Source of the DNA: Heteronotia binoei
Taxonomy: Eukaryota
DNA: 64,000 nucleotides
Direction: 5' to 3'
Assembly: GCF_032191835.1 (NCBI RefSeq)
Contig: NC_083239.1
Coordinates: forward strand, 13,640,001-13,704,000
The notes under the pieces are model-generated. The model worked only from the letters and a program-made list of their open reading frames with translations. It made no database searches and was not told where the DNA came from. The translations under genes and the position numbers were made by a program. Shown piece by piece: positions 29,895 to 55,340 of the stretch; the stretch's first letter is position 1; each line of letters begins with the position of its first letter.

Positions 29895-30206
<312 letters not shown>

Positions 30207-31064
30207 TGAGTTGATAGTCTGCATTCCTTCCACTGTTCTTATTTGCAACTGAATTTTCCCATCACCCTTGGAGTGATGGAAACATGGTGGAATGGGTGGT
30301 GGTGGTTGTGGTGGTGTCTTGATGTTTGCGGGGGGGTACATAGTATCCCTGGAATTCTTGTGCTTCAGGTAGTGTAGGTATGTGAGGCACGGCAAGAGCT
30401 ATACCTTAATCCCCTGCAGAACAGGGCACCTGCTGTTTCATAGTGCATATATGGGTAATGATGAGATTCTTCCTTTCTGGATGTACCTTACGTTGTGTGG
30501 AAGATATGTTATCTAGACATCTGATACATGAGGGATATTCCCTCCTGAATTAAAATTGGAGGTACGCTCCAAAAGTTTTATGCACTGGGGGGAAAAACTG
30601 CTGAATTGATGTGTTCTAGCAATCATAAAAGTTATGTTGGTGTGTGAGTCACAGGCATGCTCTGTGCAATGGAAACAGGCATGTCCTGTGCAGTGAATCA
30701 TGCAGAAATGCAGTTGGCAGCAGGATTTGTTTGGGCTCACGAGCTGGCAAAGTGCCAGTGTTCTTGTAGCTCACAGTGCAAAAAACTCATCGACTGGTAA
30801 AACTTGCTGCACTGGACCACTTGAAAGTAGAGGTGGTGATGGGGTTGAGGAACTGCAATGACCATATATTCTCCCACTTTAAGAAAAATAATAAAACTCT
30901 GTAGAAAAGAGCACAGGAGATGGGAAGAGAAGTTCCAACTCGAGCTTTTCTCTCCAAGATGCTGCTTTTCTGCCTTTAGATATTTTCTCCCCCTTGATGA
31001 CACCATAACATGTTATATATTGCTAAAAATTAATTCTTTCTTTCCTTTATTCCTTCCTTCCCAG

Positions 31065-31173
31065 CGGAGAAGGCAGCCACATATCTGGCCAGAGCAACGG
31101 CCGAGACCCTCAGGCCCTTGCCAAGGCTGTGCAAGTTCACCAGGACACTTTACGTACCATGTACTTTGCTTGA
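31065..31173 (+). CDS. AGO1: AGO1 final coding exon 19 ([36 protein letters not shown])
   Basis: cccag|c acceptor; 109 coding bp; TGA at 31171-31173; C-terminal MYFA typical of AGO. Confidence 0.97.
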
Positions 31174-53049: not shown

Positions 53050-53950
53050 AGGGATTTGAACTGGGAGGCTCGCAGGCGTTTCTTCTTCGGGCCCCGCCTT
53101 TCTCGCGCTGCCGTCCCTTTAAAAATTTATATTCGCCAACTGACTCGAGGGAGAAATAGCTGCTGAGCCAAACCATGCCGGTGCTTCCGTTCAGCTTTTC
53201 TTTTTTTGTAGTTAAGGCGAGCGAGAAGGCGCCTGCAGTTGCGCGCGTCAAAGGAAGGGGCGGGAACGTTAAGCGCAAGAGGAGGGGGAGGACTTCCGGC
53301 AAAAGGGTTGTGCTTGGGCGCGCATGCGCATAGCCCAGCGTCGGAAAGCCTCCCACGGACGACTGAAGAGAAATTCTTCAGACTTAATCGGCAAGAGGGG
53401 GACTTCCGGTGGGAAGGAACAACAGCACATGCGCGCCCCTCGCGAGCGGCGGAGACTTGCGCCTCAGTGTGTGCCGAAGTAGAAACTCGGGCGGCTCAAG
53501 TCAGTTGGTCTGAGGCGAAGCCAGCAAGAGGAGTCGGGGTTGCGGGCGGCCACGCAACTTCCGCCTCTTCAACCGTCACCGCGCTGCAGACTGGCCGGAG
53601 CTGGCTGAGAAAAAGAGCGGAGTCAGGAGGGGCCGCGCCAAGAGCCGCCGGCACCGTCACAGGCCCGGCCGGACCGGACCGGGAAGGCGCAAGGAGAACG
53701 ACACGGAGAAGGGACCCGACCGGCACCCGTAGCCCCGGAGGGGCTGCGCCGAGCTCCATGAATGGAAATCAGCAGTGCAGGTGAGGGAGGAGGCTGCCGG
53801 GATGCGGGGCTCTGGAAGAGCTGGACCTTATCGGGGGAGGCGGGCGGTTAGAGTCAAATATATAGCTTAAAGGAAAAGGTTCGCCTCCCCCAACATGCTA
53901 CTCTGGGGAAGTCCGCGAACTCCGAGCGGGATGGCAACAAGTCGGCTTCT
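53050..53950 (+). promoter_or_regulatory. AGO3: CpG-island promoter and 5'UTR of AGO3 with ETS/GABP and NRF1-type motifs
   Basis: Abrupt CpG-rich block; GACTTCCGG at 53291-53299 and 53401-53409; CGCGCATGCGCA at 53319-53330; no evident TATA box. Confidence 0.8.
53762..53780 (+). CDS. AGO3: AGO3 first coding exon (MEISSA + G, 19 nt)
   Basis: ATG GAA ATC AGC AGT GCA G|gtgagg; resembles the human AGO3 N-terminus MEIGSAG; inside a CpG island directly downstream of AGO1; exon 2 not in the window. Confidence 0.85.
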
Positions 53951-54284
53951 TCTCTCCTTCCCCTCTCCCGACAATTATTATTCAGAGGTATGCTGCCTTT
54001 GGCTCTGGAGGGTTCTGTCTGGCTGTAAACGCTGGTGTTTCTCCTTTGTAAATTGGTGGGCAGAGCCTTTGGCCATGGAGGTTCTGTTTGGCTGTGATGG
54101 TTAGATTTATTTAATTGTCTTAGTTTGGAGGGCAAAGGGGCAACCTTGGTGATGGATTACTGGCTTGATTGTTGTATGGTAGCTTGGCAGATCATGCATT
54201 GTAGATGGCTGGAAGCTGATGTGCTTTGGCACTTAGATTTTCTGATTGTTTATTATTTGTTTCATCTGAAACCTGCCTTTCTCC

Positions 54285-54480
54285 TCAGTAAAGCCCCCAA
54301 ATGGCTAAGAAGATCATTCTCCTCTTTTCCATATTATCCTCACAGCAACTCTATGAGGTAGGCTAGGCTGAGAGCTTGAGATTGGCCCAGGGTCAAACAG
54401 CAAACTTCCATGGCAGAGAGGGGATTTGAACCTGGGTCTACAAGATCATAGTCCAACACTCTAATCACTACAGCCCACTG
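54285..54480 (-). mobile_element. Older MIR-like SINE
   Basis: tcctcacagcaactctatgaggtagg CORE-like segment; B-box gggatttgaacc on the opposite strand. Confidence 0.6.
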
Positions 54481-54510
54481 ACCTCTGGGAATTGAAACAA
54501 TTACAGAATT

Positions 54511-54776
54511 ATCAAAGATTCCAGGTTTTCACGGCTGGTAACATCATTAGGGTTTGTAGAATCTTTCGGGATCAAGTGCCGTGTTCTACTGGAGAAAGTT
54601 TTCCTTCCAGACGTTTCGTTCTCAGCTGCGGAGAACATCCTCAGTGGCGTTGCAGCTTGGACGCCACTGCAACGCCACTGAGGATGTTCTCCGCAGCTGA
54701 GAACGAAACGTCTGGAAGGAAAACTTTCTCCAGTAGAACACGGCACTTGATCCCGAAAGATTCTACAAACCCTAAT
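54511..54776. mobile_element. Penelope-like element remnant forming a perfect palindrome (110-bp arms, 11-nt loop)
   Basis: Arms 54546-54655 and 54667-54776 are exact reverse complements; Penelope-type motifs ggttttcacggctgg and agacgtttcg; flanks AATTACAGAATT (54499-54510) and AATTGCAGAATT (54777-54788). Confidence 0.8.
54675..54715 (+). ncRNA. Minimal type-I hammerhead ribozyme motif (mirror copy on the minus strand at 54607-54647)
   Basis: CCA-CTGAGGA-T-GTTCTC-cgcagct-GAGAAC-GAAA-C-GTC-TGG: core boxes, 6-bp stem II, palindromic ACGT stem III, GUC triplet, 3-bp stem I. Confidence 0.65.
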
Positions 54777-54959
54777 AATTGCAGAATTGTTGTGGCCAGT
54801 GCAAATGTAAGGAGTGTTTTTTGTTTTGTCTTTTTTTTTTTTTAGCTTAGTAGTAAGTCCCTATAACTTAACTGTAGAAGTCCTGTAGAATTCATGCCCT
54901 CACGCACTAGCAAAAGACAATGATAAAAGGAGGAAGATGAATATCCTTGAGGAGGAAGG

Positions 54960-55340
54960 TCCAGAGTCTTTGCGCATGACTGAAAAGGCCTTCTCCCAGA
55001 TTGCTACAGATCTACCCTCAGACAGCAGGGGTACCTGAAGCAGGGTCCCTGAAGGTGAACATAGTGGTCAGGTAGATTAGTATAGGAGTAGGTAGTTCCT
55101 AAGGTAAGTTGGCTGCAGACCGTATAAGGCTTTAAAGGTGAATACCTTGAATTGGGCCTGGGAATAAATTGAAAGGTGATGAAGATGGTCGGTGACTGAA
55201 ATGATAGTCAGCATCCTGTCTGCAGCATTCTGTACCCGTTAAAGATTCCAAATACTTTTCAAGGGCAGCATAGCCCATATGGAGCATATTCCAGTAATCT
55301 AATCTAGATGTGGCCATCTTTTGTGCCCAGAAAGGTTGCA
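54960..55340 (-). mobile_element. Degenerate L2 LINE fragment
   Basis: Minus-strand SRLDYWN motif (L2 SRLDYCN). Confidence 0.6.

What the first reader, a model, noticed from the sequence alone, without database searches (positions are those of the whole stretch)
54499..54788. Perfect 110-bp-arm Penelope palindrome with a hammerhead ribozyme motif on both strands in AGO3 intron 1
Seen: 54546-54655 and 54667-54776 are exact reverse complements around an 11-nt loop, flanked by a 12-bp direct repeat with one mismatch. The right arm reads CCA CTGAGGA T GTTCTC-cgcagct-GAGAAC GAAA C GTC TGG, a complete hammerhead core (predicted cut after C54712), and the left arm gives the same motif on the minus strand. 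Known: Penelope-like retroelement termini carry minimal type-I hammerheads with a palindromic stem III that work as dimers, and long perfect hairpins are Dicer and ADAR substrates. Inference: ~0.77 kb into the AGO3 pre-mRNA there are two mutually exclusive folds, a 110-bp duplex or a self-cleaving motif. The duplex could mask the ribozyme or yield endo-siRNAs against this TE family from inside an Argonaute gene. Zero arm mismatches imply a recent insertion or ongoing conversion.
Basis: partly seen in the sequence, partly recalled or inferred. Interest (0 to 1): 0.8.

Follow-up and report, generated by a model that had tools for sequence, protein, structure and literature searches.

The report
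Fold-back Penelope retroelement fragment, AGO3 intron
The perfect 110-bp palindrome in AGO3 intron 1 is real, but it is the usual fold-back scar of a truncated Penelope-like (Poseidon-type) retroelement insertion; its inherited hammerhead motif is locked inside the hairpin, and nothing shows that it acts on AGO3.

Summary
The arms 54546-54655 and 54667-54776 are exact reverse complements around an 11-nt spacer. They are flanked by an 11/12 direct repeat, and each arm carries a complete minimal type-I hammerhead motif.

It is a dead, 5'-truncated insertion of a high-copy Poseidon-clade Penelope-like element (PLE). [quoted passage not shown] Helices I and II covary between the two families.

This is the PLE "tail", the interval between the two internal reverse-transcription start sites. 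Both target nicks follow 5'-AATT-3' and are staggered by 12 bp, which gives the target-site duplication. This matches the in vitro behaviour of the anole element.

The functional reading is not supported:
- The AGO3 transcript holds one sense motif, not a dimer.
- Forcing the hammerhead fold costs about 81 kcal/mol against the hairpin.
- RNA reads on the arms come from other copies.
- No read ends pile up at the predicted cut site.

First-stage notes flag many similar fold-backs elsewhere in this genome. It is an ordinary member of a known kind and of low interest.

The parts
54499..54510 (.). Left copy of the 12-bp target-site duplication, AATTACAGAATT. The top-strand nick falls after its terminal AATT (54510|54511).
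   Evidence: Many other copies of the family end at 54509-54512 and run into unrelated flanks (loose ends with 0.4-0.8 agreement).
54511..54545 (-). 35-nt PLE 'tail'. These are ORF nt 94-128 of the inverted copy, the interval between the two reverse-transcription start sites. It is present on this arm only.
   Evidence: RNA and DNA reads from other copies cover it. It aligns to Poseidon_Ac at about nt 88-125. The ORF stays open through it. The tail is described in PMC8557442 and PMC11167929.
54546..54655 (-). Left arm: inverted 5'-truncated copy, made of the last 17 nt of the pLTR plus ORF nt 1-93. It carries the minimal hammerhead on the minus strand (54644-54610, cut after 54610).
   Evidence: The family consensus continues past 54655 as CGGAGCAGGCGC... 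(188 reads, 0.96-0.97 agreement), so 54655 is the truncation point.
54656..54666 (.). 11-nt junction filler, CTTGGACGCCA. It does not match the family consensus. ACGCCA plus the following CTG re-copy 54672-54680, which is a slippage or template-switch signature.
   Evidence: by direct reading of the sequence.
54667..54776 (+). Right arm: direct 5'-truncated copy, made of 17 nt of pLTR plus ORF nt 1-93. It ends at the first reverse-transcription start site and has no tail.
   Evidence: Other copies also end at 54775-54778.
54675..54715 (+). Minimal type-I hammerhead motif in the sense of the AGO3 transcript. The predicted cut is between 54712 and 54713. The element's ATG is at 54684-54686.
   Evidence: The features match the PLE minimal hammerhead of PMC4209133 and the anole element's hammerhead of PMC11167929.
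54777..54788 (.). Right copy of the target-site duplication, AATTGCAGAATT. The bottom-strand nick falls after AATT (reverse complement of 54777-54780).
53762..53780 (+). Coding part of AGO3 exon 1 (MEISSAG...), with the donor GT at 53781. This is context only.
   Evidence: Contig 1 of run X1 covers 53500-53781 with no differences and then splices out.

Best explanation
This is a dead-on-arrival, fold-back insertion of the 3'-terminal part of a high-copy Poseidon-clade Penelope-like retroelement (PLE).

The element's GIY-YIG endonuclease nicked both strands of an AT-rich site after 5'-AATT-3', 12 bp apart, which produced the target-site duplication. DNA synthesis from the top-strand nick started at the outer internal start site on the element RNA and gave the tail plus the left arm. 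The copy joined to the bottom-strand nick starts at the inner start site and gave the right arm without a tail. Synthesis stopped 17 nt upstream of the element's ATG. After a short slip, which left the 11-nt filler, one arm was copied from the other by template switching onto nascent cDNA. The arms were therefore born identical.

The hammerhead motif is simply the family's ribozyme at the pLTR-ORF junction, carried along in both arms. In any read-through transcript, including the AGO3 pre-mRNA, the single sense motif is sequestered in a 110-bp duplex and is not expected to cleave. The locus is most likely a young, neutral intronic relic.

Shown here: the structure, the boundaries, the homology, the covariation, the copy number and the energetics. 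Inferred: the order of the priming and template-switch steps, and neutrality.
For: 1. Exact arms, spacer and 11/12 repeat.
2. Homology to the Poseidon_Ac pLTR-ORF junction: 62.5% identity over 136 columns, local score z = 9 against shuffles. The part downstream of the hammerhead is matched by only 1 of 2000 shuffles.
3. Identical architecture: CTGAGGATG, then 18 nt, then GAAACGTC, with the cut 26 nt after the ATG, as PMC11167929 states for the anole element. The ORF is open for 42 codons through arm and tail.
4. Covariation against Poseidon_Ac: in helix II, 3 of 6 pairs change on both sides and 1 on one side, and all stay paired. The closing pair of helix I is A-U against U-A.
5. The arm ends fall at ORF nt 93 and nt 128. 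This 35-nt tail corresponds to the anole element's roughly 34-nt tail at about nt 85-119, which lies between its two reverse-transcription start sites.
6. Reads from four runs stack only on 54511-54778. Variable flanks start at 54509-54512 and at 54775-54778, and a uniform continuation follows 54655. This means many copies, family boundaries exactly at the repeat edges, and truncation exactly at the arm tips. Libraries of only 6-19 million letters hold the arm words, so the family is high-copy.
7. Both arms share a mirrored minority variant, 54571 A with 54751 T, where about 70-80% of family reads have C with G. This points to one source for both arms.
8. Both nicks follow ATT, and both strands are extended in vitro by the anole protein.
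9. An inverted 5'-truncated copy plus a 30-40-bp tail at one end is the textbook PLE insertion form.
10. The hammerhead fold costs about 81 kcal/mol against the hairpin.
Against: - No reverse transcriptase or endonuclease coding sequence is at this locus. Longer copies of this family could not be fetched, so assignment to Poseidon rests on about 145 nt.
- BLASTP of the 42-residue peptide against the Poseidon_Ac N-terminus finds nothing. The similarity is visible only at the DNA level.
- Rfam hammerhead models give no hit even at E <= 10.
- No independent read spans the spacer or the unique flanks, so the palindrome in this individual rests on the assembly plus structural logic.
- Simple dual priming does not by itself explain why both arms stop at exactly the same base.
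- Neutrality is assumed, not tested.
Confidence: 0.88

Rival explanations
1. One reading: the site is a regulatory switch in the AGO3 pre-mRNA. The RNA toggles between a self-cleaving hammerhead and a 110-bp duplex and so controls AGO3 output.
For: A complete hammerhead core lies in the sense of AGO3, 0.77 kb into intron 1. The two folds do exclude each other.
Against: - There is a single sense copy, whereas PLE minimal hammerheads need a dimer and cleave poorly even then.
- The homologous anole ribozyme is inactive without the element's protein, and no cleaved ends are seen in vivo.
- The penalty against the hairpin is about 81 kcal/mol, and the antisense arm is transcribed first.
- Helix I has only 3 bp.
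- No read ends pile up at the cut site in family RNA.
- Similar fold-backs are noted in unrelated introns of this genome.
- Cleavage inside an intron would not obviously change the mRNA.
Confidence: 0.03
2. The hairpin is an incidental dsRNA substrate. When intron 1 is transcribed, the 110-bp duplex is edited by ADAR and/or diced into small RNAs that match the PLE family. This would be a by-product, not a selected function, and it is compatible with the best explanation.
For: The perfect 110-bp duplex is -229 kcal/mol. In Drosophila, siRNAs map precisely to Penelope inverted repeats (PMC3681739). The family is present in RNA libraries.
Against: - No read in X22 or X23 lies on the flanking intron, and none carries the locus marker 54521 C, so expression of this copy is not shown.
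- The only A>G site listed (54560, about 5-15%) looks like family variation.
- Vertebrate somatic Dicer handles long dsRNA poorly (general knowledge).
- No small-RNA data were available.
Confidence: 0.15
3. The palindrome is an assembly or library artefact, that is a fold-back chimera, and the genome holds a single truncated copy.
For: PLE inverted structures are known to disturb assemblies. No independent read here spans the spacer or the unique junctions.
Against: An artefact would not produce a 12-bp duplication abutting both ends, ATT nick sites on both strands, a tail on one arm that ends exactly at the family boundary, or a slippage-type filler. The window has no gaps. The same architecture recurs across the genome.
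Confidence: 0.03
4. Mechanistic variant: only the top strand primed reverse transcription (tail plus left arm). The cDNA then snapped back on itself, copied 110 nt, stopped at the protein-bound inner start site, and was joined to the bottom-strand nick through AAT microhomology. No second, independently primed cDNA was involved.
For: - The arms have exactly equal length, and the filler re-copies 9 nt of the arm tip.
- Other fold-backs noted in this genome are described as palindromes, with arms of roughly 78 to 220 bp (titles only).
- AAT is shared by the arm end and the start of the duplication (54774-54779).
Against: The stop exactly at the inner start site needs an extra assumption. The anole protein extends both strands in vitro from both start sites.
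Confidence: 0.35

Closest known systems
Poseidon_Ac (PAc), the Penelope/Poseidon-clade PLE of Anolis carolinensis (Arkhipova 2006; Frangieh et al. 2024, PMC11167929)
   Same: - Alignable pLTR-ORF junction, with the hammerhead overlapping the start codon.
[quoted passage not shown]
- 3-bp helix I, 6-bp helix II and 7-nt loop.
- A tail of about 34-35 nt between two internal reverse-transcription start sites, at about 90-125 nt into the ORF.
- Nick sites at ATT, with both target strands used.
   Different: Only about 62% identical over 136 nt, so it is a different family. Helix II is largely replaced by compensatory changes. Only 110-145 nt are present here, with no reverse transcriptase or endonuclease sequence. 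Activity of this family's protein and ribozyme is untested.
Minimal hammerheads of metazoan PLEs (Cervera and de la Pena 2014, PMC4209133)
   Same: [quoted passage not shown] Opposite-strand pairs about 100-700 bp apart were already noted in Schistosoma.
   Different: Helix I is 3 bp rather than the usual 4-5 bp. Here the two motifs lie 33 nt apart within a perfect palindrome.
Canonical PLE insertion architecture: pLTR, inverted 5'-truncated copy and one-sided 30-40-bp tail (Evgen'ev and Arkhipova 2005; Craig et al. 2021, PMC8557442)
   Same: An inverted 5'-truncated copy adjacent to a direct copy, a tail at one end only, and heavy 5' truncation.
   Different: This is an extreme miniature. Both copies are truncated at the same base and there is no full-length unit between or beside them.
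siRNA-producing Penelope inverted repeats in Drosophila (Rozhkov et al.; review PMC3681739)
   Same: Rearranged Penelope copies with inverted repeats that can form dsRNA.
   Different: There, siRNAs were measured and mapped to the repeats. Here no small-RNA evidence exists, and the host is a vertebrate.
L1 twin priming
   Same: Both target ends take part, which gives inverted segments within one insertion.
   Different: Twin priming inverts a different, more 5' part of the RNA and does not produce a perfect palindrome of the same 3' segment.

Membership tests
Hammerhead ribozyme (type I, PLE minimal variant) | Conserved catalytic core: C3 U4 G5 A6 N7 G8 A9, then G12 A13 A14, then A15.1-U16.1, then H17 | tested here: met
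   CUGAGGA 54678-84, GAAA 54705-08, U 54711, C 54712. There were 0 descriptor hits in 100 random windows.
Hammerhead ribozyme (type I, PLE minimal variant) | [quoted passage not shown] | tested here: met
   U 54685; G 54686 pairs with C 54704; helix II is 6 bp; ACGU at 54708-11. The criteria come from PMC4209133.
Hammerhead ribozyme (type I, PLE minimal variant) | Helix I of about 4-6 bp | tested here: inconclusive
   Only 3 bp (CCA with UGG); the next positions mismatch. Poseidon_Ac also has 3 bp.
Hammerhead ribozyme (type I, PLE minimal variant) | Helices supported by covariation among relatives | tested here: met
   Against Poseidon_Ac, helix II has 3 double changes and 1 single change, all still paired. 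The closing pair of helix I is A-U against U-A. Only two families were compared.
Hammerhead ribozyme (type I, PLE minimal variant) | Match to the Rfam hammerhead covariance models | tested here: not met
   No hammerhead family is listed at E <= 10 on the region or on one arm alone, and none at gathering score in the window. My reading is that this is expected because the motif has no helix III hairpin.
Hammerhead ribozyme (type I, PLE minimal variant) | Self-cleavage at the H17 site | not testable with these tools
   No pile of read ends at 54712|13 or its mirror 54610|09 in two raw RNA-seq runs. The anole homologue cleaves only with its protein and shows no cleaved ends in vivo.
Penelope-like element, Penelope/Poseidon clade | [quoted passage not shown] | tested here: not met
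   The locus holds only the first 31 (right arm) or 42 (left arm) codons, and no other copy lies in the window. For the family as a whole this could not be tested. The locus is filed as a fragment, not as an element.
Penelope-like element, Penelope/Poseidon clade | Sequence homology to a curated PLE | tested here: met
   62.5% identity over 136 columns to the Poseidon_Ac junction, z = 9. The segment beyond the hammerhead is matched by 1 of 2000 shuffles. BLASTP of the short peptide was negative.
Penelope-like element, Penelope/Poseidon clade | Hammerhead at the pLTR-ORF junction that overlaps the start codon | tested here: met
   ATG at 54684-86, which is A9, the bulge and G10.1. The cut is 26 nt after the ATG, as in the anole element.
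Penelope-like element, Penelope/Poseidon clade | Insertion signature: inverted 5'-truncated copy, one-sided 30-40-bp tail, duplication at an AT-rich site nicked at ATT | tested here: met
   35-nt tail at 54511-45 on one arm. The boundaries are confirmed by reads from other copies. The 12-bp duplication has AATT at both nicks.
Penelope-like element, Penelope/Poseidon clade | Dispersed multi-copy family | tested here: met
   Arm words occur in 20 runs from 10 studies, including very small libraries. Hundreds of reads carry diverse flanks.
microRNA precursor or endo-siRNA hairpin | Family match above threshold, or small RNAs mapping to the arms | tested here: not met
   The Rfam miRNA hits (mir-8515 and others) score 21-56 bits against gathering scores of 80-100, and they hit both strands equally. 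These are generic hairpin matches. Small-RNA data were not available.

The most novel reading that the evidence does not exclude
The perfect hairpin is transcribed with AGO3 intron 1 and processed into small RNAs that target the still-active Poseidon family. An Argonaute gene would then host a trigger against the element. Its arms would be kept identical by intra-palindrome conversion; the weak hint for this is 2 changes in the 59 non-palindromic nt of tail and duplication against 0 mismatches in 220 arm nt.
Probability: 0.04. Interest if true: 0.6.

Novelty: new member of a known kind. Interest (0 to 1): 0.2.

Why it matters
It matters little for AGO3 biology. The site is best treated as a repeat to annotate and mask, and as a warning that hammerhead motifs in lizard introns usually come from PLE insertions.

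Its modest value is mechanistic. A single clean genomic scar shows ATT nicks on both strands, one arm starting at each of the two internal reverse-transcription start sites, and a slippage filler at the fold-back point. That is an in vivo footprint consistent with the in vitro model for the anole element. A census of such miniature fold-backs could decide between dual priming and snap-back.

Tried and rejected
- **Rfam.** Three searches (the region at E <= 10, one arm alone, and the whole window at gathering score) gave no hammerhead hit. They gave only sub-threshold miRNA-family and other generic hairpin matches, which I rejected as uninformative.
- **Other copies in the window.** BLAST of the arm and tail found none.
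- **Peptide comparison.** BLASTP of the 42-residue N-terminal peptide against the Poseidon_Ac N-terminus found no alignment. The peptide is too short and too diverged.
- **Exon 2.** A search for AGO3 exon 2 in the window found nothing, so it lies beyond 64000.
- **SINE-like repeat.** A tRNA scan of the repeat upstream found nothing.
- **Earlier findings.** A look-up by sequence was blank.
- **Laid reads.** I hoped they would show locus-specific expression, editing or cleavage. All reads on the arms come from other copies and none lies on the flanking intron, so the locus itself could not be tested. The listed A>G site at 54560 was rejected as evidence of editing, because it sits among family variants and no DNA from the same individual was available.
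- **Retrozyme preprint.** The 2026 preprint was checked for fold-back forms and had nothing relevant.

Full report
**Observation.** Positions 54546-54655 and 54667-54776 are exact reverse complements, 110 of 110, around the 11-nt spacer CTTGGACGCCA. AATTACAGAATT (54499-54510) recurs as AATTGCAGAATT (54777-54788). As RNA the region folds into one hairpin of -229.4 kcal/mol, z = -34.7 against shuffles. As DNA it folds at -152.7 kcal/mol.

The hammerhead motif maps as follows on the plus strand:
- helix I: CCA 54675-77 with UGG 54713-15
- core: CUGAGGA 54678-84
- bulged U: 54685
- helix II: 54686-91 with 54699-704, with a 7-nt loop
- GAAA: 54705-08
- CGU: 54709-11
- C17: 54712

Its mirror image is on the minus strand. 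A descriptor I wrote for the minimal PLE hammerhead finds only these two sites in the 64 kb. It finds none in 100 random windows of the same first-order composition, even with helix I not required.

**Gene context.** AGO1 ends at about 31165 on the plus strand (...LRTMYFA*). AGO3 exon 1 has its ATG at 53762 (MEISSAG) and its donor GT at 53781. An RNA contig of run X1 covers 53500-53781 with no differences and continues with codons for AGPVGAQPLLMV, which are not in the window. Intron 1 therefore exceeds 10 kb, and the palindrome lies 0.77 kb into it.

The left repeat does not touch the left arm. 35 nt (54511-54545) lie between them, with no counterpart on the right.

**Reads from other copies.** Laying two raw RNA-seq runs, one RNA contig set and one DNA contig set on 53500-55300 gave depth only on 54511-54778, apart from low depth on AGO3 exon 1 and contig depth on the repeat at 54354-54475. 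There was none on the unique intron on either side of the insertion. Most reads were 95-99% alike and ran off into other sequence, so they come from other copies of a repeat family.

- Their boundaries are informative. Loose ends with many different continuations start at 54509-54512, exactly at the edge of the left repeat, and at 54775-54778, the edge of the right repeat.
- 188 reads continue beyond 54655 with one uniform sequence, CGGAGCAGGCGC... (0.96-0.97 agreement), which is not the spacer found here.
- Hence the tail belongs to the family, 54655 is a 5' truncation point, and the spacer is filler.
- The filler's ACGCCA plus the following CTG repeat 54672-54680. This is a slippage or template-switch signature.
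- Very small libraries (6-19 million letters) hold the arm words, so the family is high-copy.
- Both arms share the mirrored minority variant 54571 A with 54751 T, where most copies have C with G. This fits one source for both arms.

**Identity.** PMC11167929 supplies the Poseidon_Ac consensus. Joining its end to its start, as in the tandem form, and aligning it to the left copy gives 62.5% identity over 136 columns. The local score is z = 9 against shuffles. The segment beyond the hammerhead is matched by only 1 of 2000 shuffles.

The architecture is identical: CTGAGGATG, then 18 nt, then GAAACGTC. [quoted passage not shown] The frame is open for 42 codons through the arm and tail.

Between the two families, helix II keeps pairing through three double changes and one single change, and the closing pair of helix I flips from U-A to A-U. 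The motif also shows the features that Cervera and de la Pena list as typical of metazoan PLE minimal hammerheads. These are an extra nucleotide after A9, the G10.1-C11.1 pair, a long helix II and palindromic 15.2-16.2.

Rfam's hammerhead models give no hit. I attribute this to the missing helix III hairpin, but it stands as a failed test.

**How it arose.** Craig et al. describe the typical PLE insertion as heavily 5'-truncated, often with an inverted 5'-truncated copy alongside, and with a 30-40-bp tail at one end. Frangieh et al. show three things for the anole protein. It nicks at 5'-ATT-3'. It cleaves and extends both target strands. It starts reverse transcription at two internal sites whose interval is the tail, roughly nt 85-119 of the ORF.

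Here the top strand ends ...GAATT at 54510 and continues with the tail. The bottom strand ends ...CAATT at 54777 and continues with the reverse complement of the right arm. The copies end at ORF nt 128 and nt 93. The locus therefore reads as the scar of one integration event:
1. Two ATT nicks were made 12 bp apart.
2. Each junction lies at one of the two start sites.
3. Synthesis stopped 17 nt upstream of the ATG.
4. A short slip followed, and one arm was copied from the other.

The equal arm length argues for a template switch onto nascent cDNA. Whether that was the cDNA's own strand (snap-back) or a sister cDNA cannot be decided here. The order of these steps is inferred.

**Function.** The AGO3 transcript contains one sense motif and its complement, not two sense copies. 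Isolated, the helices I plus II fold is worth -7.8 kcal/mol. Forcing it within 54499-54788 costs about 81 kcal/mol (-148.7 against -229.4). The antisense arm is made first and the motif lies 9-46 nt from the spacer, so pairing should close over it as it emerges (inference).

PLE minimal hammerheads do not cleave as monomers and cleave poorly as dimers. The anole ribozyme needs its protein, is dispensable for insertion in vitro, and leaves no cleaved ends in RNA-seq. In the reads laid here, no pile of ends appears at the cut site. No read carries the locus-specific C at 54521.

The idea that Penelope inverted repeats feed siRNA production is already published for Drosophila. It is untested here.

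First-stage notes list 38 Penelope items in this genome, many of them fold-backs with hammerheads in other introns. I did not check them. They suggest that the AGO3 location is incidental.

**Age.** Zero mismatches in 110 paired positions bounds divergence per arm at about 1.4% (95%). That is a few to perhaps 15-20 million years at commonly assumed squamate neutral rates; the rates come from my own knowledge and were not tested. The duplication mismatch and the private 54521 C make 2 changes in 59 non-palindromic nt against none in 220 arm nt. The probability is about 0.045 if changes were uniform, and this is a post hoc test. It is a weak hint of arm homogenisation, and errors at integration explain it equally well.

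**Verdict.** The ribozyme or siRNA switch reading is unsupported. This is an ordinary, young, truncated fold-back PLE insertion: a new member of a known kind, of low interest apart from being a tidy in vivo footprint of the published integration model.

Noticed in passing
window 54521: The C in the tail is private to this locus. All reads and contigs of the four runs read T here (X22 128/128, X23 388/388). Together with the duplication mismatch (54503 A against 54781 G), the non-palindromic parts carry 2 changes while the 220 arm nt carry none. This is a weak hint of arm homogenisation, or of errors made at integration.
   Followed up: partly
window 54656-54680: The spacer is not family sequence. 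ACGCCA plus CTG duplicates 54672-54680, preceded by 5 unexplained nt (CTTGG). This is a slippage and template-switch footprint at the fold-back point.
   Followed up: partly
window 54300-54480: A SINE-like repeat lies directly upstream of the insertion. Contigs of X1 and X2 cover 54354-54475 at repeat-like depth. ARAGORN calls no tRNA there.
   Followed up: partly
window 53300-53781: The AGO3 promoter and exon 1 are GC-rich. An RNA contig covers at least 53500-53781, so the 5' UTR is at least 262 nt. An upstream ATG (53759-61) overlaps the start region, out of frame.
   Followed up: no
window 54541 and 54542-54665 (reads of X22 and X1): Other copies of the family show different rearrangements. 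In one, the tail is followed by a sense-oriented ...AAACCCTAAT end (14 reads). One contig replaces 54543-54664 with 16 other letters. The family forms varied tail and arm junctions.
   Followed up: no
window 54820-54845: A T-rich tract (T4GT4GTCT14) lies about 40 nt downstream of the insertion. Read laying skipped it as a repeat.
   Followed up: no
window 30138-31165: The AGO1 C-terminal coding exons are on the plus strand ([22 protein letters not shown]...; ...LRTMYFA* ending at about 31165). AGO1 and AGO3 are therefore in tandem about 22 kb apart.
   Followed up: no
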